Position numbers and translations under genes: made by a program. Shown here one piece after another: positions 3,530 through 62,882 of a stretch of 64,000 nucleotides of DNA. The stretch covers positions 558,001 to 622,000 of the forward strand of contig NW_027590202.1 of assembly GCF_964213995.1 (NCBI RefSeq), written 5' to 3'. The notes beneath the pieces were generated by a model, which made no database searches, was not told the origin of the DNA, and saw nothing but the letters and a program-made list of their open reading frames with translations. This DNA comes from Mustelus asterias (taxonomy: Eukaryota). Each line of letters opens with the position of its first letter. Within the stretch, counting starts at the first letter, position 1.

Positions 3530-4285
3530 CAAGGTCGCAGGAGTGTACCGGCAGACAGGAAGGTGGGTTGAAGTGTGTCTACTTCAATGCAAGGAACATC
3601 TGGAATAAGGCAGGTGAACTTGGAGTGTGGATTGGTACTTGGGACGACGATGTTGTGGCCATTACGGAGACATGGTTAGAACAGGGACAGGAATGGTTGT
3701 TGGAAGTTCTGGGGTATAGATGTTTCAGTAAGAGTAGGGAAGGTGGTAAAAGAGGTGGAGGAGTAGCATTGTTAATCAAGGATAGTTTAACGGCTGCTGA
3801 AAGGCAGTTCGAGGGGGATCTGCCGACTGAGGTAATATGGGCTGAAGTTAGAAATAGGAAAGGAGCGGTCACGTTGTTAGGAGTTTTCTATAGGCCCCCA
3901 AATAGCAATAGAGATGTGGAGGAAGAAATTGCAAAGCAGATTATGGATAGGTGTGGAGGTCACAGGGTAGTTGTCATGGGTGGCTTTAACTTTCCAAATA
4001 TTGATTGGAACGTTTATCGGTCGAATAGTTCGGATGGGGCAGTTTTTGTACAGTGTGTGCAGGAGGGGTTCCTGACACAATATGTGGATAGGCTGACAAG
4101 AGGTGGGGCCACATTGGACTTGGTACTGGGTAATGAAACAGGCCAAGTGTTAGATTTGTTTGTGGGAGAGCACTTTGGAGATAGTGACCACAATTTGGTG
4201 TCTTTCATTATTGCAATGGAGAGGGATAGGGCCATACGGCAGGGCAAGGCTTAGAATTGGGGGAGGTGTAATTATGATGCGATTA
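3530..4285 (+). mobile_element. CR1 LINE ORF2 AP-endonuclease fragment
   Basis: ORF 3568-4254 has the motifs YFNARN, ITETW, GGGVALL, YRPP, FNFP, LDLVL and SDHN. Confidence 0.92.
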
Positions 4286-4368
4286 TTTTGATGCAGCGAA
4301 TGGTAATGACCTGGAACTCGCTGCCTACGAGGGTGGAGGAAGTGGAGACAATAAACAATTACAAATGT

Positions 4369-4441
4369 GCCTGGCAAGCTCAGTCGGTAGAGCATGAGAC
4401 TCTTAATCTCAGGGTCGTGGGTTCGAGCCCCACGTTGGGCG
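4369..4441 (+). tRNA. tRNA-Lys(CTT), near-intact (C4T, T8A)
   Basis: 73 nt matching vertebrate Lys-CTT except at 2 positions, followed by a T7 run at 4448-4454. The invariant U8 is lost, so function is doubtful. Confidence 0.88.
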
Positions 4442-4467
4442 TTGTTGTTTTTTTCTGTGGTTTCTAT

Positions 4468-10775: not shown

Positions 10776-11662
10776 TTAATGACATTGAGTAAAGGGATAT
10801 TTCATCACATTCTTCAACTGCTCCCTGAACTTAGTCTGGGTGACCGCATAAATAAAGGTATTTGTGCAGCAACTCAGGAGCTGCAGCATGAAGCCCAAGT
10901 CCCGAACAAAAATCGCACTGTATGGAGATGGATACACCAACCAGGACATCTGGAAAGATAAAATATCAATCATTAACGTTGACCATAACAGGATGAAACT
11001 GGCTGAAATAACAAACAGTAAAATGATGGACTTCCTTCGACTTTCTATTTCTGGATCTCTGAGACTCTCCCCATTGCAGTGAGCCCGGAGTCTCCTGCGG
11101 GCTCTGCTCATCACTAAAATGTGTCTGGCGGTGAGAACATTGAGCAGCAGAATCAGAACAAATGGGATACATGGGGTTAGAATGTAATGGAGGAACACAA
11201 TTGCTCCCCAAACTGGAGAAAACAGGACATCAAATGAGTAATTACAAAACCAAGGGTCGTTCATTAATACATACTGACGTGTTACCATAAAATACCAGAA
11301 AATATTCTTTAAGCAGCTCAGCGCAGTCACTGTTCCCAAGGCCACAGATGCCGTTTTCTCGCTGCAATATTTATTTTTCAGCTTCTGGCAACAAATGGCC
11401 ACAAATCGATCAAAGGTGAAAGTGATGGTGAACCAGACAGAACAGTCAGTGGCTGCATAAAGCAGGACGGCGTGGATATTACACACGGGGATGAATTTCA
11501 GGAAATGAAACTGTTCATCAAAAACAATCGGAATGTGTCTCAATATCAGGTCGAGGATAATAACCAGTAGATCCGCCAATGACATGGCCACCAGGTAATG
11601 AGTGATACATCTGGAGAGACCACAGTTTTTGCAGATGAGGATCACAATGGTGACTAAATTCA
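10776..11662 (-). CDS. GPR139/GPR142-like class A GPCR, exon 2
   Basis: Open frame with LADL (TM2), TFDRFVAIC (DRY variant) and NTFIY (NPxxY variant). Acceptor CCTTACAG is phase 1. Confidence 0.92.
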
Positions 11663-13716
11663 CTGTAAGGAAGGGAAATAAACAATGAGATCATACATCA
11701 TGCTGCTGGCAAAATTACCAGTTTGATTGAGGGGTTATTGAGATGTGCTTCTGCATGCTGTAATGTATTAATGTAATCAGACCTGATAGAACAAATGGGC
11801 ACGTCTGTGACACAATGGAAGGAATCTTAGATGAAATAAAATCAGGGTGCGTGGAAAAATGGTGAGGCAGGAATGACACAGGGAGCCAGAGGTGATGGAG
11901 AGATTCTCGAGTGATAAGGGATCCTGGGGTTCGTGGTGGGATGCAGGATGGTGCAGAACTCAGGAGTGATGGGTGTTGGGGTGATTGGGAGGAGCCACGG
12001 GTGATGGGCCTGTTAGGGACAGAGGAGCAATGTTGACAATTTATGTGTTTTCCAAATGATTTGAAACGATTTTTAAATGATTTTGATTTGGACGTGAAAG
12101 AGACTCCAGCATGGTATCTTGTCTTCCTGGTGCCAGGGTCCAGGCAGTCTCTGAACGGGCAGAAAGTATTCTGAAGGGAGAGGGTGAACAGCCAGTGGTT
12201 GTGGTACACATTCGTACTGACAATATAGGTAGGAAGAGTGATGAGGTCCTGCAGCAGCAGTGTAGGGAGTTTAGTCGAAAGTTAAAAAGCAGCACCTCTC
12301 GGGTTGTAATCTCAGGATGACTCCTATGCCACGTGCCAGTGAGGCTAGAAATAGGAAGATAGTACAGCTCAACACGTGGCTGAACAGCTGGTGTAGGAGG
12401 TAAGGTTTCAGATATCTGGACCATTGGGATCGCTTCTGGGGCATGTGGGACCTCTACAAGAAGGATGGGGTGCATCTAAACTGGAAGGGTATAAATATTA
12501 TGGCCGGGAGGTTTGCTCATGTCACACGGGAGGATTTAAACTAGTTTGGCAGGGGAGTGGGAACCAAAGCAAAGGTGAATTAACTGAAGGGGAACCAGAG
12601 AGTAGGGCCACTAAGACTCAGAGAAAGGGCTGTCAGGGTGTGGTTGCTCATGAAAGACGTGACTGAAATGCATTTGTTTCAATGCAACAAGTGTAACAGT
12701 TAAAGCAGATGAACTTAGGGCTTGGATTAGTACTTGGAACTATGATGTTGTTGCTGTTACAGAGACTTGTTTAAGGGAAGGACAGGATTGGCAGCTTAAC
12801 GTTGAGCAGATAGATGTATCAGGCTGGTTCGAGGGAGACATCAAAGGGATGGAGCAGTTAAGGATTAAGGAGAAACTCACAGCTGTACGGTGGGAGGACA
12901 GCCCGGAGGCCCATACAGCGAGGCAATATGGGTAGAGCTCAGGAATAGGAAGGGTGTAGTCACAATGTTGGGGTTTACAATAGGGCGCCCAACAGCCAGC
13001 GGGAGATAGAAGAACAAATATGTAGGCAGAATTTGGCAAGGTGTCAAAGTAACATGGTTGTTGTGGTGGGAGGTTTTAACACACCCCATATTGACTGGGA
13101 CTCACTTAGTGCTAAGGGCGTGGATGGGGCAAGGTTTGTAAGCAGCATCCAGGAGGGCTCCTTGAAACAGTATGTAGAGAGTCCAACCAGGGAAGGGGCC
13201 GTACTGGACCTTGTATTGGGGAATGAGCCCGGCCAGCGAGTCGACGTTTCAGTGGGGGAAGAGTTCTGCAACAGTGACCACAATTCAGTAAGATTTAAGG
13301 TACTGATGGATAAAGATAAGTGTAGTCCTCAAGTGAAGGTGCTAAATTGGGGGAAGGCTAATTACAACAATATTAGGCAGAAACTGAAGAATGTAGATTG
13401 GGGGCAGATATTTGAGGGCAAACCAACTCTTGGCATGTGGGAGGCTTTCAAATGGAAGTTGATAGGGATTCAGGACTGGCACATTGCTGTAAGGATGAAC
13501 GATAAGAATGGTACGTTTTGGCAAATTTGGACAACGAGAGATATTGTGAGCCTATCCAACGAGAAAAAGCAAGCATTTGTCGAGGCTAGGAGGCTGGGAA
13601 GACACAAAGCAAGTGTGAATACAAGGAAAGTGGAACGAAACGTAAGCAAGGAGTAAGGGTTAAAAGGGAAAATCATTGGCCAGCAGGATTAAGGAAAATC
13701 CCAAGGCTTTTTATAC

Positions 13717-15328
13717 AAAGAACAAAGAACAATACAGCACAGGAACAGGCCCTTCGGCCCTCCAAGCCCGCGCCACTCCCCGGTCCAGGATTGAATCCTG
13801 AATCCAGGATCCCGGCCCAGTTTTCCAGCCTATCTACATCCTAATATCCTATCCAGCGAGCTGTCCCTCACAGCTACGATGCTTTGTTCATCACAACCTA
13901 TTAACTCACCCCCACCCCCCCATTCCAGACCATGTGATCTCCAGGGAGAGGCGAAAACCCAGAGTGAAAACCCCAGGGCCAATATGGGGAAAATAAAAAT
14001 CTGGGAAATTCCTCTCCGACACCCTGAGGCGATCGAAACGAGTCCAGGAGATCACACTGGCCCTGATCAGAAAATGCTTCCCAACCCTATTCATTTCCAC
14101 TTCTGCTTTACGAACACCATCTGAATTCCCTGCCCCCGAGACAGGTTCCCAACTATCCGCAGTCTCGCTCTGTACTGGCACCAGCAAGATGATCATAGAA
14201 TGAAGCCTTGAAACGAGAAACAAAGAACAATTCGCCCGCGCCGCTCCCTGGTCCAAACTAGACCACTCTTTTGTATCCCTCCATTCCCACTCCGTTCATA
14301 TAGCTGTCTAGATAAGTCTTAAACGTTCCCAGTGTGTCCGCCTCCACCACCTTGCCCGGCAACACATTCCAGGCCCCCACGACCCTCTGTGTAAAATATG
14401 TCCTTCTGATATCTGTGTTAAACCTCCCCCCCTTCACCTTGAACCTAAGACCCCTCGTGAACGTCACCACCGACCCGGGGAAAAGCTTCCCACCGTTCAC
14501 CCTATCTATGCCTTTCATAATTTTATACACCTCTATTAAGTCTCCCCTCATCCTCCGTCTTTCCAAGGAGAACAACCCCAGTTTCCCCAAGCTCTCCTCA
14601 TAACCAAGCCCCTCCATACCAGGCAACATCCTGGTAAACCTCCTCTGTACTCTCTCCCAGGCCTCCACGTCCTTCTGGTAGTGTGGCGACCAGAACTGGA
14701 CGCAGTATTCCAAATGCGACCGAACCAACGTTCTATACATCTGCAACATCAGACCCCAACTTTTATACTCTATGCCCCGTCCTATAAAGGCAAGCATGCC
14801 ATATGCCTTCTTCACCACCTTCTCCACCTGTGACGTCACCTTCAAAGATCTGTGGACTTGCACACCCAGGTCCCTCTGCGTCTCTACACCCTTTATGGTT
14901 CTTCCATTTATCGTGTAGCTCCTCCCTACATTATTCCCACCAAAATGCATCACTTCGCATTTATCAGGATTGAACTCCATCTGCCATTTCTTTGCCCAAA
15001 TTTCCAGCCTATCTATATCCTTCTGTAGCCTCTGACAATGTTCCTCACTATCTGCAAGTCCTGCCAGTTTTGTGTCGTCCGCAAACTTACTGATCACCCC
15101 AGTTACTCCTTCTTCCAGATCATTTATATAAATCACAAACAGCAGAGGTCCCAATACAGAGCCCTGCGGAACACCACTAGTCACAGGCCTCCAGCCGGAA
15201 AAAGACCCTTCCACTACCACCCTCTGTCTTCTATGACCAAGCCAGTTCTCCACCCATCTAGCCACCTCCCCCTTTATCCCATGAGATCCAACCTTTGTCA
15301 CTAGCCTACCATGAGGGACTTTGTCAAA
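13717..15328 (-). mobile_element. Young 5'-truncated CR1 with a long 3' UTR
   Basis: Uninterrupted RT C-terminal frame 14258-15328, a ~540-bp 3' UTR and a (TTCTTTG)n tail. ATAC is repeated at both junctions. Confidence 0.93.
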
Positions 15329-16136
15329 TACATATATAAAGAGCAAGAGGGTAGCAATGGAAAGGGTTGGCCCACTCAAGGACAGGGGAGGGAATCTGTG
15401 CGTGGAGCCAGAGGAAATGGGCGAGGTATTAAATGAGTACTCTGCATCAGCATTCACCAAAGAGAAGGACTTGGTGGATGATGAGTCTGGGAAAGGGTGT
15501 GCAGATAGTTTGAATAATTTTGAGATTAAAAAGGAGAAAGTATTGGGGTTCTTGGGAAATACTAAGGTAGGCAAGACCCCAGGGCCTAATGAGATTTACC
15601 CCTGAATATTGAGAAAGTCAAAGGAGAAAATTGCTGGGGCCTTGAAAGAAATCTTTGTATCCTCACTGGCTACCGAAGAGGTCCCAGACGATTGGAGAAT
15701 AGCCAATGTTGTTCCTTTGTTTGAGAAGGGTATGAAGATTCCAGGTAATTACAGGCCTGTGAGCCTTACGTCAGTGATCGGGAAATTATTGGAGAGGATT
15801 CTTCGAGACAGGATTTACTCCCACATGGAAATAAGTGGACGTATTAGCGAGAGACAACATAGTTTTGTGATGGGGCCGTCGTGTCTCATTAACTTCATCG
15901 AGTTTTTCGAGGAAGTGACGAAGATGATTGATGAGGGTAGGGCAGTGGATGTTGTGTACATGGACTTCAGTAAGGCCTTTGACAAAGTACCTCATGCCAG
16001 ACTTGTGCAGAAGGTGACGTCGCATGGGATCAGATGTGACCTGGCCAGGTGGATGCAGAACTGGCTCGTTCATAGAATACAGTAAGACGTCTCACAACAC
16101 CAGGTTAAAGTCCAACAGGTTTATTTGGTGGCAAAA

Positions 16137-31540: not shown

Positions 31541-31947
31541 ATGTGTGTTGAGTCAAAATAGGAGCATCACTTTTCCTGCTCAGTGTGCAGTGGATACTCA
31601 GCACTTCTATTTCATTTTTTTCTGAATGCATATTGAGGCATATGTAAGAGCTAATGTCATATGCATGCACAGTATTACATTCAAGTAATATTCGAGTGTT
31701 GATTCTCTGAGGGGAATGGTTACTGGTTTGGCAGTCTTATAGTCTTTGGACAGCAGTTTGAATTCCACCACGGCGGGTTAACTCAGCAACTCAATTCAAG
31801 GGCAATTAGAGGTGATTGTAAATGAAGGAAGACAATCTCAATGATGGACCTTTTCCTCACAAGTAAACGCAAAATTTTGACAAAGTTTCTACCTGAAACT
31901 TTCGAAACGTCGGGCCAATATGCAACAACTGTCATATTTTCACATGT

Positions 31948-32020
31948 GGGCCAGTGGCGCAATGGATAATGAGTCTGACTACGGATCAGAAGATTCCAAG
32001 TTCGACTCCTGCTTGGCTCG
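31948..32020 (+). pseudogene. tRNA-Arg(ACG), mutated
   Basis: 5 differences from the 43191 copy, disrupting the D, T and acceptor stems. Confidence 0.88.
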
Positions 32021-32148
32021 GTGCAAACGTTTAAATGATGAGTACAGAGCAAAGATAAAATTGCTGTAAAACCGAGATTTGAGTAATATTCAGCAACTAA
32101 CTAAAATCGTATAAATGACCCACACTATACATGAGAATGCTTAATTAA

Positions 32149-32212: not shown

Positions 32213-32762
32213 TTATCTTTTAAACAAAATCAAGTACCTTTAAAAGGAACAGATTTAAGAATGATCTACCAGTTATAGTCGATGCCTCTTTATTCTGTCT
32301 GTGAAACATTCTGGCGCCTAAATCTCGTTCATCTATCGGAAGTCCAGCAGGTCCGCACTGATTCTCGATTTCCTCATCGGTCTGAATGGTTTTTACTACT
32401 TCTTTATTGCGAAGAGAAATTCTAAAAAGATGCGTGTGGGAAATGTGCACCATTTACGATTTCAATTATGTCTGTCTTTTTGAGCACACAATACTATTAG
32501 ACATGTTTCAGATGGTGATTAACTATGTTGGTCTTCAACTATAAACACATTAAATTCTTTTGTGGACAGAACGAGTTGCGAATACGTGTAAAAACAAGTC
32601 ATTTATTTCCAGCCATTGCTTCCCAAAATGCGGCATTTCTGATTCTCCGAAATTGATTTGAGGCCGATGGCAAAGGCAACATAACATTGGATTCGCATGA
32701 GGTTGAGCAATGAACATACACCATGCAGACTTTTCTCACGCTTCATGAGAAAGATCCAACAG

Positions 32763-32835
32763 TGTTTCTGCCCGGTTTCGGGCCGGGGATCTTTCGTGTC
32801 TAAGGCGAACGTGATAACCACTACACTACGGAAAC
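32763..32835 (-). pseudogene. tRNA-Val pseudogene
   Basis: The 5' half GTTTCCGTAGTGTAGTGGTTATCACGTTCGCC is intact, but the anticodon and B-box are mutated. Confidence 0.88.
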
Positions 32836-33108
32836 AGCTAACAGCAAGCTACAGCAGATATAAATCGGCCTGTTTGCGATGTTCAACTTCGCTGTGTTGC
32901 TGCAGGTTCCAATGGTTAGACTGAGAGTCCATGTCACTTTATTCAGGAAGATAACCGTGACTTTAAATCTGAATGCTCAACTTATCTTGAACTTCAAAAT
33001 TTAAAAGGGCTCGCCTCGCAAATATCTAAGGGAGCAATGATTTCTGCCCATTCATTAATGCATAATTCTCATCTTCCTTCCAATAATTTCAAACAATTGT
33101 ACTCAGTA

Positions 33109-33250
33109 ATAAAAGCAAATTGCTGCGGATGCTAGAATCGGAAACCAAAACAGAAAATGCTGGAAAATCTTACAAGGCCTGGCAGCTTCAGTCAGGAGAG
33201 AAAAGAGCAGATGTTTCGAGTCCAGATGACACTTTATCAAAGCTCATTGT
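33109..33250 (-). mobile_element. Short Penelope-type terminal stub with a decayed hammerhead (paralogue at ~34481-34616)
   Basis: 16-bp TSD ACAATTGTACTCAGTA at 33093-33108 and 33251-33266. TTGATAA-stem-GAAAC on the minus strand. Confidence 0.65.
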
Positions 33251-33946
33251 ACAATTGTACTCAGTATTTGTTTCAATATTTAATATCAATGCATAATTTA
33301 ACACATATGTCTTCATTATGAATTGAATATCTCTGAAATTGAACATCACTGAATTGCAAACATAACTGACCAACAGAATGAAGCGAATCACCGGGTAATA
33401 CAGATCGCAAATTTGAGATTGACTATGGTCAGCTTTTAAACAAAGTCAACTCCATTTAAATGGAGGAGAATCAAAAATTATCTGTTCGTGACACTTGAGC
33501 CTTTTTTATTATGGGTGTGAAACATTCAGGCGCATAAATTCCGGCCCTTTACAGGAAAGTCCAGTAGATCCGCGCTGAGTCTCGGTTCCCTCATCTGTCT
33601 GAGTGGCTTTTCCTGTTTCTTAGTGACGAAAAACCATTTAAAAAAAGATTCTTCTGTGAAATGTGCGCCATTTCCTCTAGTTCACTTACAGTAACACTTG
33701 TATCTGTCTTTTTGAACACACACTACTATCAGATATTTCAAATGGTGATTAACCATATTAATCTGCATCTATAAGCCCATTAAATTCTGTTGTAGTCTGA
33801 ACGGGATGCGAATAAGTGCTCGGTGTCAAAATCGAACTTTCCTGTCAGTGCGTCAGAAAAAGTCGTTTCGTATTTCACAGAAAACACTTGAGAGTGATGC
33901 CAGAGCAGTGATAACATGCCTTGAACATCGGGTTTCGGATAATGTT

Positions 33947-34104
33947 GTAACTATGACTCTCTTAGAAGGGTCTCACTAGAGAGTCATCTCTGGGTAGTTA
34001 CCTCTGTGAATGTTATTGGCGTGTTTTGGCATTCACAGTGAAGTTGTGCCTCCTCGCGGCCCCGTCGGTAACCTTGGTGGCTTGCCACCAAGGGCTAAAC
34101 AAGC
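33947..34104 (+). ncRNA. R2 retrotransposon 5' fragment: 28S target sequence plus HDV-like ribozyme
   Basis: GTAACTATGACTCTCTTA (the 28S R2 site), then the P3/L3 core GCC-TCCTCGC-GGC, P1 3' strand CCCGTC, GG, a P4 hairpin, GCTAA, and P2 TTGT/ACAA. Confidence 0.88.
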
Positions 34105-34140
34105 AATTTTCCCTTACCTGACCTGAGAAAGCTGAATGAA

Positions 34141-34213
34141 TGTTTCTGTGCGGTTTCGAAGCGGGAACTGTTTGCGTGTTACAGGAACGTGATAACCACG
34201 ATACTACAGAAAC
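34141..34213 (-). pseudogene. tRNA-Val(AAC) pseudogene
   Basis: 73-nt alignment with many substitutions. Confidence 0.85.
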
Positions 34214-35382
34214 AGCTTAAAACAAGTTAGAGTAAATCTGCCTGTCTGCAATGTTCAACTCCGCTGTGTTGCTGCAGGTTCCGATGGTGAGACTGAGAGC
34301 CCATGTCACTTAATTCAGGAAGATAACCGTTACTGTCAATCTAATTGCTCAGCTTATCTTAAACATCAAAATTTAAATGGGTTCGTCCCGCAAATATCTA
34401 AGGGAGCAATGATTTCTGCCCATTCATTAATGCATTATTCTAATCTTCCTTCGAATAATCTGAACCATTTGTACTCAGTAATAAAAGCAAATTACTGCGG
34501 ATGCTGGAATCGGAAACCAAAAGAGAAAATGCAGGAAAATCTCACAAGGTCTGGCAGTAAGGATAGAAATTAGCTGACATTTCGAGTCCAGATGAGACAT
34601 TGTCAAAGCTCATTGTACAATTGTACTCAGTATTTGTTTCAATATTTAATATCAATGTATTATTTAACACACATGTCTTCATTATGAATAGAATATCTCT
34701 GAAATTGAATATCACTGAATTGCAAACATAACTGACCAACAGAAGGAATCGGTTCACCGGGTAATACAGATCACAACTTTTTTGATTGACCATAGTCAGC
34801 TTTTAAACAAAGTCAGCTACATTTAAATGGAAGGGATTGAAAAGATATCTGTTAGTTACGCTTGAGCTTTTTTATTATGGGCGTGAAATATTCAGGCGCA
34901 TAATTTCCGGCCATCTTTTGGAAAGTCCAGTAGATCCGGACTGAGTCTCCATTCCCTCATCTGTCTGAGTGTTGTTTCCTATTTCTTTGTTATGAAGAAC
35001 GATTTTAAAAAAGATTCTTCAGGGAAATATGCTCCATTTCCTCTCGTTCACTTGCAGTATCACTTGTGTCTTTCCTTTTTAGCACACCCTACGATTGGAC
35101 ATGATTCAGATGGTGATTAACGATGTTAGTCTGCACCTATAAACCCATTCATTTCTGTTGTAGACTGAACATGGTGCTATTATGTGCATTGCGTCAAAAT
35201 CGAAACGTTTCTTTCCTGTCAGTGCGTCAAAAATAAATCGGCATTTCTTATTTTACAGAAAACATTTGAAGCCGAGGTCAGAGCAATGATAATATGGTTG
35301 TAAGGTCGAGATTCGGATAATGTTCAGCAACGTACTGAAATCATACCGATTCCCCCCACCCGACATGAGAAAGCTTAATGAA

Positions 35383-35455
35383 CGTTTCAGCCCGGTTTCG
35401 AGCCAGAAACTTTGCGTGTGTTCAGCGAATGTGATAACCACTACACGACAGAAAC
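35383..35455 (-). pseudogene. tRNA-Val(AAC) pseudogene
   Basis: 73-nt alignment with many substitutions. Confidence 0.85.
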
Positions 35456-36262
35456 AAGAGACAGTACCACGCCTCCAATTCGCCTGACTACAATGTTCAA
35501 CTCCACTGTTTTGCTGCAGGTTCTCATGGTTAGATTGAGAGCCCATGTTACTTAATACAACAACAACTCCGTTACTATCCACCTGATTTCTCAACTCATC
35601 AAAATTCAAAAGCGTTCTTCTGGGAAATGTCTATGGGAGAAATGATTCCTGCTAAATCATTAATGCATCATTATCATCTTCCGTCGAATAAAAATTATCC
35701 AGTATTTGTCGTTATTCAACATTTTATATCAAACATAACTGACCAACAAAAGGAATCGAGTCACCGGTTAATAGATGTAACTAACATTCAGGCGCTTAAA
35801 AAATTCTGTCCATCTATAGGAAAGTCCAATAAATCCGCACTAAGTTTCGATTTTCCCATTTGTCTGAGTGTCTTTTTTCTATTTCTTTATTATGAAGAAC
35901 GATCTTTAAAAAAGAAGGCTCCTTCATTTCACTTACAGCATCACTTGTGTCTGTCTTTTTGAGCACGCACCACTATTAGACATGTTTCAGATGGTGATTA
36001 ACTATGTTAGTCTGCATCTATTAAACCAACTAAATTCTGTTGTAAACTGAAGCAGATGCTAATATGTTCACGGTGTCAAAATAGGAACGTTTCTTTCCTG
36101 ACATTGCGTCATAAAATTCAGCATTTCTGATTTTAGAGAAAGCATTTGAGGCCGAGGTCAGAGCAAAGATAATATGGCTGTAACATCGAGATTCGGATAA
36201 TATTCAGCAAGAAACTGAAATCAGACAGACTTACCTCACCCTACATGAGAAAGTTTAATGAA

Positions 36263-36336
36263 TGTTTCTGCCTAATTTCAAACCGGGATCTTTTTTGCGT
36301 TGGAGGCGAACGTGATAACAACTACACGACTGATAC
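36263..36336 (-). pseudogene. tRNA-Val pseudogene
   Basis: Degenerate alignment in the same repeat context. Confidence 0.8.
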
Positions 36337-37878
36337 CGCAGGCTGCCGGTGTGTTGAAAAATGTCTGTTTGGATTTTCTGGCCGAGTCAGTGTTTTAGAG
36401 CAGGGGAAGAACCCCTGGAAATTAATTCACTTAATTCAGGATGTGAAAGAGAGTTTCACAAACTCGACCAATATACGATGCCACCACCGGGTGGCGTGAC
36501 TTTCATTACGAAGTTTTCAAGTTGGCGCCTGAGAATCAATAAATGTCTTTTCTATTTGTCTCATTCAGTGAATTCATAGTGAGCAGAGAGCATGAGGATG
36601 CCACAGTAACTATGAAGCGGACAGATGAAGTCAGCAATACCCATTGAAGGTCACTTGTGTTCCCTGCTGTTGCATTGGCTGGAAATAGATATTGTTCAGC
36701 TAACATAAGGAGAGATGGAATTAGGCGCTTTGGAATCACAGAAAAATAGGCAGAGGAATCGACAGAAATGCAAGGACAATGACAAGTCAGTGAGAGAGTT
36801 AAGCGGAGACACAGTGAGAAAAATAAATAGACAAAGGGAGAAGCAATGGCTGAGATGGCAGCAGAAATTCAAGGAATATATGAAGTCAACAATATAAAGT
36901 ACAATCTGATATGGGAAAGGTTTATCCTGAAACATCTACTCGATTGAACTGTGATTGTAGAGCATCAGGCCACTGGTTCATTTAAATAAGTTTAAATTTG
37001 GGGCACAGGTAAGGGCCCAGTTGGCTATGTAGAGAGTGGTCATCATTAACAATGGAATTTGATCAATGTAACAGAGTCAAAAACAAACATAGTGATCCCC
37101 TAACAAGTAAGGCAAATTATAAGGATGTTTGCAGATTTCTGAATTGGTGACTTATGATGAGAATAATGAAAGTCCTCATTCCCCAGTGCCATGCGACTTC
37201 TTGATTGATTAGTTGCAGTGGTCATGAATACGTGATGCATGAGCTCCCTCTGTTGGTGCTGAGTGGTAAATGGCCTTCTTTCTGGAGATTCAATGTATTC
37301 ATTATATTTTCAAAATATGTTTCTGCCAAATCTTTCCTGATTTGTATTATTGTTACTGTGATGCAACCTGTAGATTTTACGACTCCTGTGAAATTGAATG
37401 CGAGTTGTTTTCTACACAGATAGCTTTGAAATTTGCTGTTGAGTGCAATGACGGTGGGTTCAATGCCTGTAACGTTTTGAGAACTGTCCCCAATTAACAA
37501 AGAAGGCTTTTATTCCCAACCGTTGTCGCAGCCAATTGAAACATTCCCACGACCAGGACATTAATTGTGTTGCAGCTTGAGGTATTTCCATTCACTGGTA
37601 TCCAGCTCACCACCGACTGGTGGAGCCAGACCAGAAAAGTGGCATGATTGTCTTTTGGAAGAATGAGTCGAGTATGGTTCTGTGCTGGATCTGCCTGACA
37701 GATTGGATTCTGCAGTTTGTTTTCTCCATTGCGGCTGGAAAGAGTTAGGTGTCAATTGCATCTGCGGTTAACTTGGTTTCCTCTGTTTGTGTTTGAGCGG
37801 CCGAAAACTCACTTAACATCTGGCCATGAGTCTCAGCAATCCTTAGTCGCCACGGGCTCACATCTCCAGTGTTAAGCA

Positions 37879-41788: not shown

Positions 41789-43190
41789 AGTCCCATTAAA
41801 TGGAATGGGTTCAATCTATAATTGTTTGGGTGAAGATATTTACATGTATTTCCGGTCTCTCCAGCGATTGGTTAATTCCCAAACGAATCAACTGGTGACG
41901 TCCAATCATGTCCCTGATTCTCCAATTCATCCAATCAGCTCACAGAGCCTTTGTTCTCCAGTTTATTACGTCAGAGCAGGGCCAGTGAATCAATGAAGTT
42001 GTTTTCCCCACAGCGGGACCGAAACGAGGATTCACCGCAATGTTGGCCCTTTAGCCAAGACAGCTTCTGAGGTGGTGACAATGAGGTAAATGGTTAATGC
42101 TGTCCTTGTAACAATGTCGGGAGTTCCCATTCAACAGTCTGAATATTTTGCATATCCTTTTTCACGTTATATGAACTTGAAAATATCTACAACGAAGAAC
42201 GAATGTTCCAAAATACCATTTTTGATTTTGATGCCCTTGCATTTAATATCAGCGGGGTTCTTGTCAAACATTTTGGAGGGCCGAAGGGCCTGTTTCCTGT
42301 GCTGTACTGTTCTCAACAGTGGGTGGGGGCGGTGGCCGGGGAAGGGGTGTGCTTCCACAGGTTGATCTTCAGATTCAATGTCACCGAGGAGATCCATCTA
42401 CCTGCCTAAAGAATGTTCCTGGAGACCCATCTTCTTTCTCAGGAGGTCCATGTCCACCTCAGAATTTCTATTACCGAAATTGACCTCATCCAAAACTCTC
42501 GGAGGCAATGAGTTCCAGGTCCTGAGCACTCGCTGTGGAAAAGATGTTGCTTCCAAATCTTCTTCGCCCCCGCCTTGCCCAATATCTTAAAAATTGCCCC
42601 TCCCCCTCTAAACTTGCCCTAATCTTGTCCACCTCGATTAAATCGCTCCTCAATCTCCTTCGCTCCAATGGACAACAATCCCAGCATCACAAACCAGAAA
42701 CCTCTGGCTAATTTGAACTTTTCAAAACTAAACTTACTCCAAAGAAATTCCTCCATCTGATTTAACTGAAATTTGTCAACTTTTAAAAAACATTTCTGTG
42801 TATTTTGCTTCTTAAAATTAAACATGTTTAATCAGAGTTCATCAACGTTTTAGAAAATGTTTTCACTATTTTGAAAAACGTAATGTTTCCACGTATTTTT
42901 CGAGAAATTTCCAACTTTTTAAAAGGTAGCTTAAACTTGCTAACATATTTCCCCGAATACTTTAACGAGAATTCGTCATTTAAATAAACTATTTTTTAAA
43001 AAAAAACTTAATTGAACTTTATCAGTATTTTTTTCTTAAAATAGTCAACATTTTTTTGAACAATCATTGGCTAAGATAAATTTCATCACAGAAGCTGACT
43101 GCATTTGGTCAACATTTCTCTGAATTGGTCAACACACATTTTTCACCCACACGAATATGGAGTTTGTGAACTACTGTTAAATTATTACAC

Positions 43191-43263
43191 CGAGCCAGCC
43201 AGGAGTCGAACCTGGAATCTTCTGATCCGTAGTCAGACGCGTTATCCATTGCGCCACTGGCCC
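43191..43263 (-). tRNA. tRNA-Arg(ACG), consensus sequence
   Basis: GGGCCAGTGGCGCAATGGATAACGCGTCTGACTACGGATCAGAAGATTCCAGGTTCGACTCCTGGCTGGCTCG. All stems and both A and B boxes are intact; only T3 lies immediately downstream. Confidence 0.97.
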
Positions 43264-44570
43264 ACAGCAAAGCCGCATGCAGCAATGTTTACATATCGGT
43301 CCGAGGCTTCAAAATCGGCAGAAACATGGTCAAAACATTTTAATGAGGAAATGTTGCATAATTAAATTTTTCTCTACTCACTTACAGTAATTCTACTTTG
43401 CCTTGAATTGAGTTAACCTGCTGTGTTGGAATTCGAACCCTGGTTCCCAAAGCTTCAGCCTGCTTCTCTGCGTTATCAATCCAGCGTCAACAACGTGACT
43501 CGAAACCGTACCCCTCCCGCCAGTGAATCCACGATTGAATATTACCTGAATGTAGTATCTTACAATCATATGACATTGGCCCTTACTTGAGCCACAAAAT
43601 ACATTCAGGAAAAGAAAAAAGTGCGGAAAATTCACGACAAACTGAGCAGGAAAGAAGACACACCTATTCTGACTCAGCACGCATGTTATCAGTTTATTCA
43701 GTGGCTAAAAGAGCAGGGCAGAGGATGGGAATCCTGTGGGAGTAACTCACCTCCCGACTCCCACAAAACAGTCCACGATCGACGTGGCACAAGTCAGGAG
43801 TGCGATAGAATATTCTCCACTTGTCTGCATGATGCAGGAATCCACCAAAGGCATTTTAGACAGCATCTCCCAAACCCAAGAGCGCTTCCACCTGGCCCCT
43901 GCCACCCCCCCCCCCCGCCCCCTCTCCCCCCCTCCCCCCTCCAACGCCACACAGCCAACACCACACTCAATTCCCTCAGCATTCTGATTTGGAAATATAT
44001 CGCCGTTCCTCCACTGTCATTGGGACAAATTCGTGGAATTCCCTCCCTAACAGCACTGTAAGTGTACCTGTACAAATGGATTACAACGTTTCAAGAAGGC
44101 AGCTCACCACTACTTTCTCAAGGCTAAATACTGATGGGCAGTGCATGCTGATCTAGCCAGCGACACCCACATGAACAAAAAGAATCATCCAGGCAGCTCA
44201 CTGAACCCATAATCATGGGGCCAGCTGAAGAGGTGAATGGAGATAAAATGAATGTCAAGTTACATAGCCAACCCTGTTGATCATATATTTATTTTCGAGC
44301 GAGTGTGTTGTGCTGATAGTTTCCGCACAGTTTGTGCTCAGGTTCTCAAACGAAACCCCATGTGGACCAATCCCAATGTCTGCAATGCAAAGAAAAAAAC
44401 AAAACCTGCAGCTCATGAAATCTGATCAAATCTTCGTGGGAGAGGGCGGCACAGTGGCTAATTCTGCTGGCTCACAATACCAGGGACCTGGTTTCGATTC
44501 TGGGGTTAGTCACTGTCTATGTGGATGGAGATATACAGCTTTTTAAAGTTGCAGCAGTAGCTCACCGATA

Positions 44571-44643
44571 GTCCCAGTGACCTAACGCGTAAGGCACTGG
44601 CTTCCTAAACCAGGGAGCATGTGTTCGAGGCACTTCTGGGATG
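44571..44643 (+). pseudogene. tRNA-Arg(CCT) pseudogene
   Basis: CCCAGTGACCTAA..TAAGGCACTGGCTTCCTAAACCAGGGA, with a degenerate T-arm. Confidence 0.8.
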
Positions 44644-46957: not shown

Positions 46958-48380
46958 TCAGAACCACATGTTTTCGGGGAATGGGCCTAGCTCCTTAGTT
47001 GGGAGGTCTGCCCCCTCCACCTGTACACTTGCGACTGTCATAATTCGCGCTGTTACTGTTTTGCAACAGGCATTCAATAATGCCATACAAACACAGCAAG
47101 TAATTACAATTACAATTAATACAATCAATCCATGCATCAGGTATGAACCCCACGACCCAACCATTGCCCCAGCCAGCCAGGAGGGTTATACTCATGATAT
47201 TGGTTCCCTTCTTCCTGTATTGCTTTTGCTACTTGTTTAATATGATCTGCTAAGCGAGTTATATTCTCCGAAGCTTCGGGAATATACGTACAGCATTCGA
47301 AGCCAGCTATGGCACATGTTCCTCCTTGGGAGGCTAGCACATAATCGAGTTCCAATCAGTTCTGTAACGCCACAGTCCGAATAGCTACGACCTCTGCTGA
47401 CATTTCAGAGATGGCCGTGCTCACCTCCTCGAACCCATCCTTAGTCTTATTTGCAACTTTCTCTAGGGTTGAGGCCATCCGTATCAGTTCCTGTGCTGTC
47501 TTTGCCGTCCCAAAAAATTGGTAGGCTATCATGAAGAACCGTTCTGTCTCACTAATGGCTCGCTTAGCCCTAAGCAGGTGTATTTCGGGGTGGTCCCATA
47601 AGTCAGTGTAATGGTGAATATAAGGCACCACATATGCCAAATAACACGATCCTGTCCAATTCCAGGGAAGCCACGGATAGGCATTGTTTCCACAGACAAA
47701 ATAGGTACCATTATATGCAGTCATCTCGCTTACATAAGCGGAGGAGAGGCTAACCGGGACAGTGGCTATGGGGCACTGGATTGTGACCTGTATCATGGCC
47801 TCAGCGTCATCAGTGATATCAATCTGTTGTATACAGTAGCTACGGCCAACAGGTATGGTTCCATTTCTTGTCAGGCAGATAACTTCCCTCTGTTTATTTT
47901 TCACAACAAAGTAGGGTGGGGATCCTGATCTGTCGTAGCCGGGCTGGTAATTCTTCTTAAAGGACGATAAAGTGCACCCTCCGCCCCCTAGCCTTGAAAC
48001 AACATCACTGTTGCTGATACCCTGCATAGTGGTACCCGATGGGGTTTTAAATGTCAGTTGCATTGTCCCTTTCTGGGTTCCATTCTGATTTAAAACCCAT
48101 TCAATTACTTCTAGAGCTGATAAATGGATAGGAAATAAGGGAATTCCTCCCTTTCCTCCATGCATGGGAATGTGTGAACAGACCCAGCACTTGGTCAGAT
48201 TCGATTGTGATGCTCTCCTGGTACCAGATAAGACATATACACAAAGATGTTCATACAATAGACAGAGTCATCGTTACAGAGATGATCATTGTGCTTCATC
48301 CCTAACTCCTCATAATTCAATTTATATTCTCCTGCTATGGCTAACAGGGCCAGGGTCGTGAGCATCAGCATGAGAAGCAT
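46958..48380 (-). pseudogene. env: Retroviral env, disrupted
   Basis: Signal peptide MLLMLMLTTLALLAIA, CWVC, furin site RAKR, ISD LQN*LELDYVLASQGGTC, CX6CC and a TM helix. One stop and frameshifts. Confidence 0.93.
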
Positions 48381-51634: not shown

Positions 51635-52780
51635 TTACATATCGATGCAGGCACAGGTGTCTCCACTGATAATGACCTCATAGGAGCCTTTCCATTTGGG
51701 GGCAAATCCAGGTTTTCCTGGTAGTGTTTTTACCATAACCTTGCTGCCCGCCGGGGGTACCTCCGGGGTCTGTTCTAGTTTATTTTGCTCATCTATCACT
51801 ATTTGTTTGTCCCATACTGTTTTCCGCATATCTTTCAATTGGGAGCTTAACTCTGATACATATCGTCTAATCCTGTACCGTAATGGGCCTACATCTGCAC
51901 ATTTCCGTGATCCATCCACAAACAGGACCAAATATGGTGCCTCCAGGGGCGCATCTTTTATTCTACTCTCCTCTACCTCTTCGTCTACGTCCCCACATGA
52001 GTGGGGAGACCCTTCACCTAACATTCCTTCTGCGGGGTTCATTCCCATGTCTCGTACAATGGTGATGGACTTAGTGGGTGGGAGAAGCACTGCCTCCCAC
52101 TTCGCCCCTCTCATGTTTGAGACAGACCGCAATTTTCCTGTGTTCAGCATTTCCACCAAAGTATGTTTGGTGTGTAAAACAATCTTCCCCGTCATTATGA
52201 TGGGCTCGCTGACCTTTACTGCCCATGCCGCGCAATCTAGTGCGGCTATACATCTGGGTAACCCGGTTACTACGGGGCCCTCCGCTGTGGAATAATAACA
52301 CACGGGTCGCTGTTTGTCCCCATGGACCTGTGTGACTACTGCCGAATAAAACCCCCCTTCGTGATTACAATAGATAGGAAAATCTTTACTAGCGTCAGGC
52401 AGTCCAAGTCCTGGAGCCTTCATTAGTTCTACTTTTAGTTTACTCTGTGCCCTTTCCTGTTCTGATCCCCATTCGATAACTTCTAGAACGGGTTTCCCCC
52501 CTTTTACTAGCCTTTGTATTGGTTCGGCTAGCCTTGCGAATTCTGGTATAAAGTTGCGGCTGTAATTAAACAGTCCCAAAACCTTCCTTACCCCTCGGAC
52601 GGTTACTGGTCTTGGCATTTGCTGAATGGCTGTTTTCCTGTCCAGTGGCATTTCTTTGGTCCCCTGGGATATCAGGTGTCCCAAATATAACACCTGCGCT
52701 TTCCCTATTTGGGCCTTCCTGGGGCTCGCCTTTAGTCCCTGTTCGTCTAAGTGTTTCAGGACTGAGTATAGTGCCGTCTG
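51635..52780 (-). pseudogene. pol: pol remnant: RT C-terminus, tether and start of RNase H fused to an integrase tail
   Basis: YLGHLIS, VLGLFNYSRNFIPEFA and LFVDGS, then directly DVGPLRYRIRRY..APKWKGSYEV. Confidence 0.92.
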
Positions 52781-59101: not shown

Positions 59102-60441
59102 AAAGCTCTGGAAAAGAATGGTTCAATCAAGCAGGTGCAGCATGGATTCATGAAGGGAAAGTCATGTTTGACTAATTTACTGGAATCTTTAGAGGATATA
59201 ACGAGTGCGGATGACAGAGGGGAACCGGTGGATGTGGTGTATTTAGATTTCTCGATGGCATTCGATAAGGTGCCTCACAAAAGGTTGCTGCATAAGATAA
59301 AGGCACACGGAGTTGAGGAGTGTTAGCGTGGATTGAGGATTGGCTATCTAAGAGAAAGCAGAGAGTCGGAATAAATGGGTGCTTTTTCAGTTGGCAATTA
59401 GTGACTAGTGGCGTGCCGCAGGGATCGGTGCTGGGGCCTCAACCATTTACCATATACATAGACGATCTGGAGGAGGGGACCGAGTGTAGGGTAACAAAGT
59501 TTGTGGATGACACAAAGATGAGTGGGAAAGCAAATTGCGTGGAGGACACAGAGAGTCTGCAGAGAGACTTGGATAGCCTAAGTGAGCGGGCACGGATCTG
59601 GCAGATGGAGTATGACGTTGGTAAGTGTGAGGGTATCTACTTTGAAAGGAATAGGAGTAAAATGGACTATTATTTAAACGGTGAAAAATTACAACATGCT
59701 ACTGTGCAGAGGGACCTGGGGCTCCTTGTGCATGAATCACAAAAACTCAGTTTGCAGGTGCAGCAGGTAATCACGAAGGCAAATGGAATGTTGGCCTTTA
59801 TCGCGAGAGGGATGGAGTATAAAAGCAGGGAGGTCTTGCTGCACCTGTACAGGGTACTGCTGAGGTCGCACCTCGAGTACTGTGTACAATTTTGGTCCCC
59901 TTATTTAAGAAAGGATATATTAGCTTTGGAGGGGGTACAGAGAAGGTTCACCAGGTTGACTCCGGAGATGAGGGGGTTAGCTTATGAGGAAAGATTGAGT
60001 GGACTGGGCCTGTACTCATTGGAGTTTAGAAGGTTGAGGAGAGATCTTATAGAGACATACAAGATAATAAAGGGGCTAGACAGGGTAGAAGCAGTGGGTT
60101 ATTTCAACTTACAATGGAAACAAGAACTCGGGGCATAGCCTCAAAATACGGGGGAGTCAATTTGGAACAGAGTTGAGGAGGAACTTCTTCTCCCAGAGGG
60201 TGGTGAATCTTTGGAAATCTCTGCCCAATGAAGCAGTGGAGACTACCTCGTTAAATGTGTTTAAGTCACAGATAAATAGATTTTTAACCACTAAGGGAAT
60301 TAGGGTTTTGGTGAGCGGGCGGGTAAGTGGAACTGACCCCACTATCAGATCAGCCATGATCTTATTGAATGGCGGAGCAGGCTTGAGGGGCTAGATGGCC
60401 TATTCCTGCTCCTATTTCTTATGTTCTTATGTTCTTATGTT
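59102..60441 (+). mobile_element. CR1 RT and 3' end with a 7-bp TSD
   Basis: ORFs 59069-60138 and a (TTCTTATG)n tail. CATCTGG lies at 59095-59101 and 60442-60448. Confidence 0.95.
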
Positions 60442-62057: not shown

Positions 62058-62129
62058 ATGTTCCACCGAGATTCGAACTCAGATCGCTGGATTCAGACTC
62101 CAGAATGCCCACAATTTCACCAGAGAACA
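62058..62129 (-). pseudogene. tRNA-Gln(CTG) pseudogene
   Basis: TTCCACCGAGATTCGAACTCAGATCGCTGGATTCAGA on plus. Confidence 0.85.
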
Positions 62130-62729: not shown

Positions 62730-62810
62730 CAAAAGGCACAGTGAATCTACCGATATCATTCGCTGAGGTACGTGTTCTAAGTTAAGCAAGAGTTGGGGCG
62801 TTGAGAGCAG

Positions 62811-62882
62811 TGGTTGCATCGAGATTCGAACTCGGATTGTTGGATTCAAAGTGCAGAGTGCTCACCGTTACACCATGGAACC
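62811..62882 (-). pseudogene. tRNA-Gln(TTG), best-preserved Gln copy but with stem mismatches
   Basis: GGTTCCATGGTGTAACGGTGAGCACTCTGCACTTTGAATCCAACAATCCGAGTTCGAATCTCGATGCAACCA. Confidence 0.85.

What the first reader, a model, noticed from the sequence alone, without database searches (positions are those of the whole stretch)
33947..34104. Orphan R2-type HDV-like ribozyme with its 28S target sequence, outside rDNA
Seen: one unit of the tRNA-Val tandem repeat carries ~160 bp absent from sister units (compare 35310-35370 and 36190-36250). It starts with 18 nt identical to 28S rRNA just upstream of the R2 site (GTAACTATGACTCTCTTA). It then has the HDV-fold elements in order: P2 TTGT 34044-47, P3 GCC 34048-50, L3 TCCTCGC, P3' GGC, P1 3' strand CCCGTC 34061-66, GG, P4 CCTTGGTGG-CTTG-CCACCAAGG, J4/2 GCTAA (candidate catalytic C 34095) and P2' ACAA. 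J1/2 has three clean helices, two pairing back onto the 28S bases (GTAACTA/TAGTTAC and TGACTCTCT/AGAGAGTCA). Known: R2 elements release their RNA from rRNA co-transcripts with a 5' HDV-like ribozyme that can cut upstream within 28S. CCCGTC is complementary to 28S GGCGGG, 28 nt upstream of the R2 site. Inference: this lineage has or had an R2, and its extreme 5' end was captured ectopically. The first 7 nt (GGCGGGA) are missing, so this copy is probably inactive in cis. Ordinary truncated retrotransposition leaves 3' ends, so a 5'-only piece suggests RNA-templated repair, template switching or a non-autonomous ribozyme-bearing family.
Basis: partly seen in the sequence, partly recalled or inferred. 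Interest (0 to 1): 0.9.

Follow-up and report, generated by a model that had tools for sequence, protein, structure and literature searches.

The report
Stray R2 ribozyme fragment, shark genome
A 156-base piece from the front end of an R2-type jumping gene, holding most of its self-cutting RNA fold, sits in a tRNA-related repeat of a shark genome, probably pasted in while a DNA break was mended, and it lacks a strand it needs, so it is most likely inert.

Summary
One unit of a decayed tRNA-Val-like tandem repeat carries an insert at 33947-34102. That is 156 nt, not 158, and it is absent from three sister units.

The insert starts with 18 nt of the 28S sequence upstream of the R2 site. Rfam gives only a sub-threshold HDV_ribozyme match: 19.9 bits against a gathering score of 50.

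It is not an orphan. Contigs from two individuals and from a second species match 33947-34102 end to end and then run on unlike the window on both sides. A longer parent therefore exists.

- **Activity:** the window copy lacks the 5' strand of P1, has no substitute upstream, and stops 4 nt into the 3' strand of P2. It is almost certainly dead.
- **Junctions:** 16 nt of target are replaced, with no target-site duplication, no element 3' end, and 1-nt and 3-nt microhomologies. This fits capture at a DNA break, not target-primed insertion.
- **Known background:** R2 in sharks and -28-cleaving R2 ribozymes are already published.
- **Not shown here:** the parent's 28S flank and its ORF.

This scan had already noted six similar 28S-headed ribozyme pieces on other DNA of this genome. 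I saw only their titles.

The parts
33947..33964 (+). 28S rRNA-derived leader, running from about position -21 to -4 relative to the R2 site. The 7 nt that would form the 5' strand of P1 are missing upstream.
   Evidence: Read. It occurs once in the window. It matches 28S strings printed in PMC3774820. The parent contigs' match begins exactly at 33947.
33965..34043 (+). Element-encoded J1/2 region. It holds two segments complementary to the leader (33978-33986 and 33995-34001) and a hairpin of its own (34004-34012 / 34030-34038).
   Evidence: 16 of 18 leader bases are covered by complementary words; 6 of 20,000 shuffles reach this.
34044..34047 (+). P2 5' strand (TTGT).
   Evidence: Perfect complement of 34099-34102. 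Only 4 bp are visible because the fragment ends there.
34048..34060 (+). P3 (GCC/GGC) with L3 (TCCTCGC), the catalytic core.
   Evidence: Aligns to the HDV_ribozyme consensus letter for letter, with one unfilled L3 position. It differs at one letter from CCUCCUCGUGG, called the most conserved R2 ribozyme sequence in PMC5035012. At that letter it reads C, as the HDV antigenomic ribozyme does (PMC3774820 Fig. 6 legend).
34061..34068 (+). P1 3' strand CCCGTC, then GG for P1.1.
   Evidence: Forms 6 pairs, one of them G-U, with the 28S motif at -28; duplex -12.1 kcal/mol. The two differences seen here in the second species, 34062 C>T and 34065 T>C, both keep pairing with G (table 3).
34072..34093 (+). 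P4 hairpin: 9 perfect pairs with loop CTTG.
34094..34102 (+). J4/2 GCTAA, with candidate catalytic C at 34095, followed by the first 4 nt of the P2 3' strand (ACAA). The fragment ends at 34102. CAA at 34100-02 is shared with the target.
   Evidence: GGCUAA aligns to the HDV model. All three parent contigs stop matching at 34102. Empty-site contigs resume at 34100.
33857..33946 (.). Left flank: spacer of the tRNA-Val-like repeat unit, continuous with the sister units.
   Evidence: (family D12).
34103..34139 (.). Right flank: spacer of the same unit. Relative to paralogues, 16 nt of target between the two flanks are gone.
   Evidence: table 5c: 16 letters lie between 33947 and 34100 in 2 contigs of X1 and 2 of X3.
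34140..34212 (-). Decayed tRNA-Val-like pseudogene of the host repeat unit. It is not part of the element.
   Evidence: Aligned with the sister units. ARAGORN and Rfam do not call it. The name Val rests on my recall of the tRNA-Val sequence.

Best explanation
The stretch 33947-34102 is a dead fragment, cut at both ends, of the 5' end of an R2-type retrotransposon RNA or its DNA copy.

**What it contains**
- 18 nt of 28S leader.
- The structured J1/2 region.
- The HDV-like ribozyme core, through the first 4 nt of the 3' strand of P2.

**How the parent works (inferred from the family)**
The ribozyme would cut a co-transcript 28 nt upstream of the R2 site. It does so by pairing CCCGTC with the 28S letters GGCGGG.

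**Why this copy is inert**
The seven letters that hold that 5' strand are missing and P2 is cut short, so this copy cannot fold or cut.

**How it arrived (inferred)**
It was not placed by target-primed reverse transcription. A piece of nucleic acid was joined into a chromosome break in the spacer of a tRNA-Val-like repeat. The join used 1 nt and 3 nt of microhomology and cost 16 nt of target.

**Likely source**
Both ends fall at the limits of the ribozyme domain: 7 nt inside the processed RNA's 5' end, and inside the last helix. I therefore favour a cDNA of the stable ribozyme-containing 5' part of processed element RNA as the source. A DNA source is not excluded.

**Age**
The event is young relative to the repeat.
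For: **Identity**
- The 28S leader and the core motifs lie in HDV order.
- The only Rfam family matched over the core is HDV_ribozyme, spanning model positions 1-89 of 89, with L3, P3 and GGCUAA aligned.
- E = 2.2 is for 4,227 families. By my arithmetic that is about 5e-4 for the one family named in advance.
- The P1 3' strand pairs with 28S at -28. PMC3774820 calls -28 the most frequent R2 cleavage site, including in a vertebrate.

**A parent exists (table 8)**

| Run | Record | Contig length | Differences over 33947-34102 | Runs on unlike the window |
|---|---|---|---|---|
| X1 | 4 | 409 nt | 0 | 251 nt downstream |
| X3 | 11 | 425 nt | 0 | 125 nt upstream, 144 nt downstream |
| X6 (another species) | 26 | 998 nt | 9 | 46 nt upstream, 796 nt downstream |

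**Dead copy**
- No 6-bp partner for CCCGTC, G-U allowed, lies in 33300-34047.
- Only 4 bp of P2 are present, where the family has at least 5.

**Repair-type junctions**
- Sister units and empty-site contigs carry 16 nt that the window lacks.
- They share G at 33947 and CAA at 34100-02 with the insert's ends (tables 5 and 5c).
- There is no duplication of target, no poly(A) and no element 3' end.
- This matches the structure described for endonuclease-independent L1 insertions in PMC1920257 (abstract and section 11 read).

**Young event**
- The insert shows 0 of 156 differences from the parent contigs, and all 5 CpG are kept.
- Its flanks are only 80.7% and 86.1% identical to the neighbouring units.
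Against: - The covariance-model score is far below Rfam's gathering score: 19.9 against 50. Nothing passes at gathering.
- I never saw the parent contigs' flanks. That the parent has 28S upstream and an R2 ORF downstream is inference only.
- No RNA run holds the stretch.
- The letters CAA of the supposed P2 3' strand could come from the target. Only one letter of P2' would then be certainly element-derived.
- In the second species, 34068 G>A would break one P1.1 pair unless L3 changed too. Three of that contig's 9 differences were not listed.
- Contigs spanning the two junctions of the filled site were not among the rows shown, so reads have not confirmed the junctions.
- RNA versus DNA origin rests only on where the ends fall.
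- The depth figures are not copy numbers, as the tool itself warns.
Confidence: 0.7

Rival explanations
1. The same fragment came directly from DNA. A broken piece of an element-bearing locus (rDNA or elsewhere) was ligated into the break, or copied in by synthesis-dependent repair, with no RNA or reverse transcriptase involved.
For: The junction features (target loss, microhomology, no duplication) are those of end joining whatever the filler. PMC1920257 section 11 describes DNA-templated filler at such sites.
Against: A random DNA piece has no reason to begin 7 nt inside the predicted RNA 5' end and to end inside the last helix of the ribozyme. This is an after-the-fact argument from one locus and is weak.
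Confidence: 0.2
2. A longer member of the family, full length or about 1 kb and internally deleted, first inserted here by reverse transcription with a nearly complete 5' end. A later deletion then removed everything from inside P2 to 16 nt into the right flank.
For: A 5' end within 7 nt of full length, joined by 1 nt of microhomology, is typical of completed non-LTR insertions. That is my knowledge of the field and is not tested here. Titles of earlier notes speak of 1,072-nt and 1,201-nt 28S-headed elements outside rDNA in this genome. I have not seen or checked them.
Against: It needs two events within the time in which the 156 nt gained no difference from the parent. No trace of a target-site duplication is left.
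Confidence: 0.12
3. The roughly 160-nt ribozyme module is itself a small mobile, non-autonomous unit that inserts as such, near tRNA genes.
For: Titles of earlier notes list further pieces of 158-166 nt, two of them in a tRNA repeat or tRNA spacer (unchecked).
Against: - The three contigs that hold the module all continue 144-796 nt beyond 34102, so the common form is longer.
- The window copy has no duplication of target and loses target letters.
- The similar lengths in the notes may only reflect how readers delimited the ribozyme.
- Copies in tRNA repeats may be duplicates of one event, spread with the array.
Confidence: 0.05
4. The insert is an assembly chimera inside a hard-to-assemble tandem repeat.
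For: No contig shown to me spans either junction of the filled site. The flanks are highly repeated, with summed depths up to about 22,000 in X1.
Against: Both junctions fall at microhomologies with a clean 16-nt replacement. That is biological in look, not a read-overlap artefact.
Confidence: 0.03

Closest known systems
R2 5' HDV-like self-cleaving ribozyme of the type that cuts at -28 in 28S (Eickbush, Burke and Eickbush 2013, PMC3774820)
   Same: - The order of helices matches.
- The P3/L3 core sequence matches.
- J4/2 has a C in GCUAA.
- A long structured J1/2 holds the 28S bases.
- The P1 3' strand pairs with 28S at -28.
   Different: - Here it is only a fragment: there is no P1 5' strand and P2 is cut after 4 nt.
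- It lies in a tRNA-like repeat, not at the head of an R2 in 28S.
- Most of the leader (16 of 18 nt) is paired to element-encoded antisense segments. I did not find this described in the sections I read.
R2 SIDEs, short internally deleted non-autonomous R2 derivatives of Drosophila (PMC3414825; abstract and outline read)
   Same: A ribozyme-bearing R2 5' end without the ORF.
   Different: - SIDEs keep an R2 or R1 3' end.
- They sit at the R2 or R1 site in rDNA.
- They have junctions typical of target-primed insertion.
- This copy has none of these three.
Endonuclease-independent (non-classical) L1 insertions at DNA breaks (Sen et al. 2007, PMC1920257)
   Same: No target-site duplication, loss of target DNA, microhomology at the joins, and an incomplete element.
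   Different: - The element is of a different family, R2-type with a restriction-like endonuclease.
- The captured piece is the extreme 5' end only.
- The pre-insertion state is inferred from paralogues, not from an orthologous empty site.
Hepatitis delta virus ribozyme, Rfam RF00094
   Same: L3/P3 and GGCUAA align letter for letter, apart from one unfilled L3 position.
   Different: The score is 19.9 bits against a gathering score of 50. P1 is not formed by adjacent sequence. J1/2 is about 100 nt where the model has 9 positions.

Membership tests
HDV-like ribozyme, R2 type | P3 with L3 core close to CCUCCUCGUGG, plus two G for P1.1 after the P1 3' strand | tested here: met
   34049-34059 reads CCTCCTCGCGG, one letter off the published string. 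At that letter it reads C, as the HDV antigenomic ribozyme does. GG is at 34067-68. The region aligns to RF00094.
HDV-like ribozyme, R2 type | P1 of 6-7 bp whose 5' strand starts at the cleavage site; for -28 types this strand is 28S sequence | tested here: not met
   The 3' strand is present and pairs with the 28S motif (6 pairs, -12.1 kcal/mol). The 5' strand is absent from this copy, and there is no 6-bp substitute in 33300-34047.
HDV-like ribozyme, R2 type | P2 of at least 5 bp closing the fold (PMC3774820) | tested here: not met
   Only TTGT/ACAA, 4 bp, are present. The match to the parent ends at 34102. The parent's own P2 could not be seen.
HDV-like ribozyme, R2 type | Catalytic C in J4/2 after P4 | tested here: met
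   GCTAA at 34094-98 follows a 9-bp P4. The C at 34095 aligns to the C of GGCuAA in RF00094. Catalysis itself was not tested.
HDV-like ribozyme, R2 type | Passes a curated covariance model | tested here: not met
   19.9 bits against gathering score 50, E = 2.2. No ribozyme passes at gathering. I saw no R2-specific ribozyme family among the matches. That Rfam has none is my recall.
HDV-like ribozyme, R2 type | Mg2+-dependent self-cleavage | not testable with these tools
   This needs a bench assay.
R2 retrotransposon | Single ORF with zinc-finger/Myb, reverse transcriptase and restriction-like endonuclease domains downstream of the 5' UTR | tested here: not met
   The insert ends after 156 nt. 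Among the 10 longest-type ORFs of the window scanned, only AP-endonuclease-type LINE and retrovirus-like reverse transcriptase pieces were found. The parent's ORF was not seen.
R2 retrotransposon | Insertion at the R2 site of 28S rDNA | tested here: not met
   No rRNA match in the 64-kb window. The flanks are tRNA-like repeat spacer. The parent's location was not seen.
R2 SIDE (non-autonomous) | Ribozyme joined to an R2 or R1 3' end, with junctions of target-primed insertion | tested here: not met
   Nothing follows the ribozyme. There is no target duplication, and 16 nt of target are lost. No Rfam R2 3' element was found in the window.
Break-repair capture (endonuclease-independent-like insertion) | No target-site duplication, target deletion, microhomology at the joins, incomplete element | tested here: met
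   tables 5 and 5c. The empty state is inferred from paralogues: 3 in-window units, plus 2 contigs in each of X1 and X3. It is not from a proven allele or orthologue.

The most novel reading that the evidence does not exclude
The parent may not be a classical rDNA-bound R2. It may be a family of 28S-headed, ribozyme-capped R2 derivatives that spreads outside rDNA in sharks.

**Why this could work**
Cleavage at -28 leaves the whole ribozyme, its P1 5' strand included, on the RNA. Every full-length copy could then cut itself out of any host transcript, which would free the family from rDNA.

**Where the window copy fits**
It would be one abortive by-product of that activity.

**Hints**
- Six earlier notes of this scan report such pieces on other DNA of the same genome. 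Two describe elements of 1,072 and 1,201 nt 'outside rDNA' (titles only, unchecked).
- The X3 and X6 contigs run 125 and 46 nt upstream of 33947.
- If Logan's graph uses 31-letter words (my recall), a contig should not get that far into sequence shared with the many uninserted 28S genes.
Probability: 0.3. Interest if true: 0.65.

Novelty: new member of a known kind. Interest (0 to 1): 0.35.

Why it matters
By itself this is a dead scrap of a known kind of element, and R2 in sharks is already published.

It has modest value in three ways:
- **A natural example of capture.** The ribozyme-containing 5' end of a site-specific retrotransposon was captured at a break in a vertebrate germline, with both ends at the limits of the compact RNA fold. 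This fits the idea that the HDV-like fold protects the R2 RNA 5' end (discussed in PMC11331408).
- **An unusual leader.** The J1/2 region holds antisense segments that pair with 16 of the 18 leader bases. This could be tested for an effect on folding or on 5'-junction formation.
- **A possible family.** Together with the other notes on this genome, it flags a possible R2-derived family outside rDNA. If real, that would bear on how site-specific elements lose their site dependence.

Tried and rejected
**Chance resemblance: rejected.**
- The 18-mer and the 13-mer core each occur once in the window, 84 nt apart. Chance expectations for the whole window are 0.06 and 0.38, even with mismatches allowed.
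- The same 156 nt recurs in other individuals and in another species.

**A cis replacement for P1: rejected.** None is found.

**Fetching the parent through a protein: no result.**
- The 45-aa open frame across the insert was searched against 1.84 billion representatives. It gave 1 hit (E = 1.2e-4, 28 residues at 48% identity).
- That hit is an 801-aa protein of immunoglobulin V-set repeats and is unrelated.
- The other open frame is 31 aa, too short for the search for homologous proteins, and stayed unsearched.
- No frame of the insert looks coding.

**Fetching relatives by DNA pattern: no result.**
- The core pattern in viral contigs gave 1 match, in G+C-rich coding-looking DNA with no leader. 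I take it for chance.
- Leader plus core, with gaps of 70-100 and 25-55, gave 0 and 0 matches in metagenome contigs.
- The genome-contig collection holds bacteria and archaea only, so I did not scan it.
- These blanks say nothing about sharks, which the collections do not cover.

**An R2-like ORF in the window: not found.** 10 of the 24 ORFs of at least 150 aa were scanned.

**Papers on 5'-only R2 ribozyme pieces outside rDNA: none found.**
- Searches listed nothing on this in their titles or abstract starts.
- That is not proof of absence.
- Supplements that may bear on this were closed: Figure S2 of PMC3774820 (vertebrate ribozyme structures) and Tables S2 and S7 of PMC13188248 (shark R2 sequences).

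**Depth as copy number: not used.** The tool warns against it.

Full report
**What is there**

Window 32.4-36.4 kb holds a decayed tandem repeat with units of about 880-1,370 bp. Each unit ends in a tRNA-Val-like sequence on the minus strand. Only the copy at 32763-32835 is still called a tRNA, and ARAGORN calls it Leu-TAG. The name Val rests on my recall of the tRNA-Val sequence.

Aligning the unit that holds the finding with three sister units shows a block present in this unit only. The left edge is sharp. The flank runs to 33946, and the 18-mer GTAACTATGACTCTCTTA starts at 33947.

Laid contigs fix the right edge. In 3 of the 4 runs laid, a contig matches exactly 33947-34102 and then continues with letters unlike the window. 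The fourth run, a small one, has no depth there. The insert is therefore 156 nt. It is unique in the window.

**Is it an R2-type HDV-like ribozyme?**

- P2 5' strand: TTGT.
- P3 and L3: GCC-TCCTCGC-GGC.
- P1 3' strand: CCCGTC.
- P1.1: GG.
- P4: 9 bp.
- J4/2: GCTAA.
- P2 3' strand: ACAA.

Rfam gives nothing at gathering thresholds. A permissive scan of 33700-34400 gives HDV_ribozyme as the best of three listed matches and the only one lying on the ribozyme core. It scores 19.9 bits against a gathering score of 50, with E = 2.2 over 4,227 families. It spans the full model, with L3/P3 and GGCUAA aligned and P1 unpaired. Below-threshold scoring is expected when P1's 5' strand lies far upstream or is absent. 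It remains a failed membership criterion.

The published literature supports the assignment:
- PMC3774820 (Results read in full) shows that many R2 ribozymes use 28S letters as the P1 5' strand.
- It shows that -28 is the commonest cut site, including in zebra finch.
- It gives P1 as 6-7 bp and P2 as at least 5 bp.
- It prints 28S strings that contain 17 of the 18 leader letters.
- PMC5035012 (passages read) gives CCUCCUCGUGG as the most conserved R2 ribozyme string. The window has it with one change, to the letter of the HDV antigenomic ribozyme (PMC3774820 Fig. 6 legend).

CCCGTC forms six pairs, one of them G-U, with the 28S motif.

In the second species' contig, 6 of the 9 differences were listed. 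Two lie in this strand (34062 C>T, 34065 T>C), and both keep pairing with G. One difference, 34068 G>A, would weaken P1.1.

The J1/2 region pairs back onto the leader. Complementary words cover 16 of the 18 leader bases, and 6 of 20,000 shuffles reach that. The whole 158 nt folds better than all 200 shuffles, z = -3.0.

**Not an orphan**

| Run | Record | Contig length | Depth figure | Differences over the 156 nt | Extension beyond the match |
|---|---|---|---|---|---|
| X1 | 4 | 409 nt | 343.6 | 0 | 251 nt past 34102, 2 nt before 33947 |
| X3 | 11 | 425 nt | 27.8 | 0 | 125 nt upstream, 144 nt downstream |
| X6 (another organism by its code) | 26 | 998 nt | 21.9 | 9 | 46 nt upstream, 796 nt downstream |

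A longer parent therefore exists in this species and in a relative.

I could not see the contigs' flanks. The loose ends at 33947 and 34102 were not among the rows printed, and read laying allows only one call. That the parent lies in 28S and encodes an R2 protein is thus unshown.

Sharks are known to carry R2. R2Sqj of an angel shark is named in PMC5035012. Full-length R2s in Chondrichthyes are reported in PMC13188248 (passages read). That the genome is a shark's I know only from the titles of earlier notes.

**Why the copy is dead**

- The seven letters that would hold the P1 5' strand are missing.
- No six-base partner, G-U allowed, lies in the 650 nt upstream.
- The fragment ends four letters into the P2 3' strand.
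- No RNA run holds the stretch.

**How it got there**

Empty-site relatives, in 2 contigs of X1 and 2 of X3, read flank-G, then 16 letters, then CAAGC... (tables 5 and 5c). The three in-window sisters have the same 16-17 letters.

The window has lost those 16 letters. The insert's first letter, G, and last three letters, CAA, coincide with target letters. There is no target duplication, no poly(A) and no element 3' end.

This is the signature of joining at a break. It is like the endonuclease-independent L1 insertions of PMC1920257 (abstract and section 11 read).

The insert spans almost exactly the ribozyme domain: from 7 nt inside the predicted processed 5' end to inside the last helix. I therefore favour a cDNA of the stable 5' part of the processed RNA as the filler. 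PMC11331408 (passages read) discusses the fold's stability. This is an inference from one locus, and a DNA filler remains possible.

The event is young. The insert shows 0 of 156 differences from the parent contigs, with 5 CpG intact. Its flanks are 80.7% and 86.1% identical to the neighbouring units. An X3 contig that carries the empty site differs from the window's right flank at only 2 of 178 positions (record 13).

**What remains unexplained**

- The X3 and X6 contigs extend further upstream than I would expect if the upstream sequence were ordinary 28S shared with uninserted genes. This rests on my recall that Logan uses 31-letter words.
- Summed depth over 33947-34011 is higher than over the core: 711-1,162 against about 365 in X1.
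- Six earlier first-reader notes report like pieces on other DNA of this genome, two of them as elements of about 1.1-1.2 kb outside rDNA. I saw titles only.
- Together these leave room for an R2-derived family outside rDNA, which I could not test.

**Verdict**

It is dead, not an orphan, and probably a break-repair capture. Interest is modest unless the dispersed family proves real.

Noticed in passing
window 33947-34011 against 34012-34083: Summed contig depth is 2-3 times higher over the leader and its antisense hairpin than over the ribozyme core. In X1 it is 711-1,162 against about 365; X3 shows the same trend. There may be further copies or a second subfamily sharing only the first 65 nt or so.
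   Followed up: no
window 34065: In X1, one contig (depth 25.2) reads C instead of T in the P1 3' strand, the same letter as in the second species. The family has at least two variants in this species, and the window copy carries the commoner one.
   Followed up: no
window 32400-36400: Decayed tandem array of tRNA-Val-like units, with spacings of 1,230, 1,368 and 881 bp. Only the 32763-32835 copy is still called a tRNA, as Leu-TAG. Laid contigs show the spacer is a very abundant repeat in both species.
   Followed up: partly
window 4368-4442, 31947-32021, 43190-43264, 44571-44643, 62058-62129, 62810-62882: Other tRNA genes lie across the window (Lys-CTT, two Arg-ACG, one found by Rfam only, Gln-CTG, Gln-TTG). 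The window lies in a tRNA-rich region.
   Followed up: no
window 10776-11663 (-): A 295-aa ORF matches the rhodopsin-family 7-transmembrane receptor profile (7tm_1, E = 2.5e-15). It is a possible intronless receptor gene or pseudogene.
   Followed up: no
window 47356-48258 (-) and 51635-52693 (-): ORFs match a retroviral envelope profile (TLV_coat) and reverse-transcriptase RNase H profiles. They are pieces of an endogenous retrovirus-like element. I only named them and did not analyse them.
   Followed up: no
window 3568-4254 (+), 13033-13656 (+), 14258-15574 (-), 59320-60138 (+): AP-endonuclease-type and reverse-transcriptase ORF pieces of LINE elements. None is of the restriction-like-endonuclease (R2) kind.
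   Followed up: no
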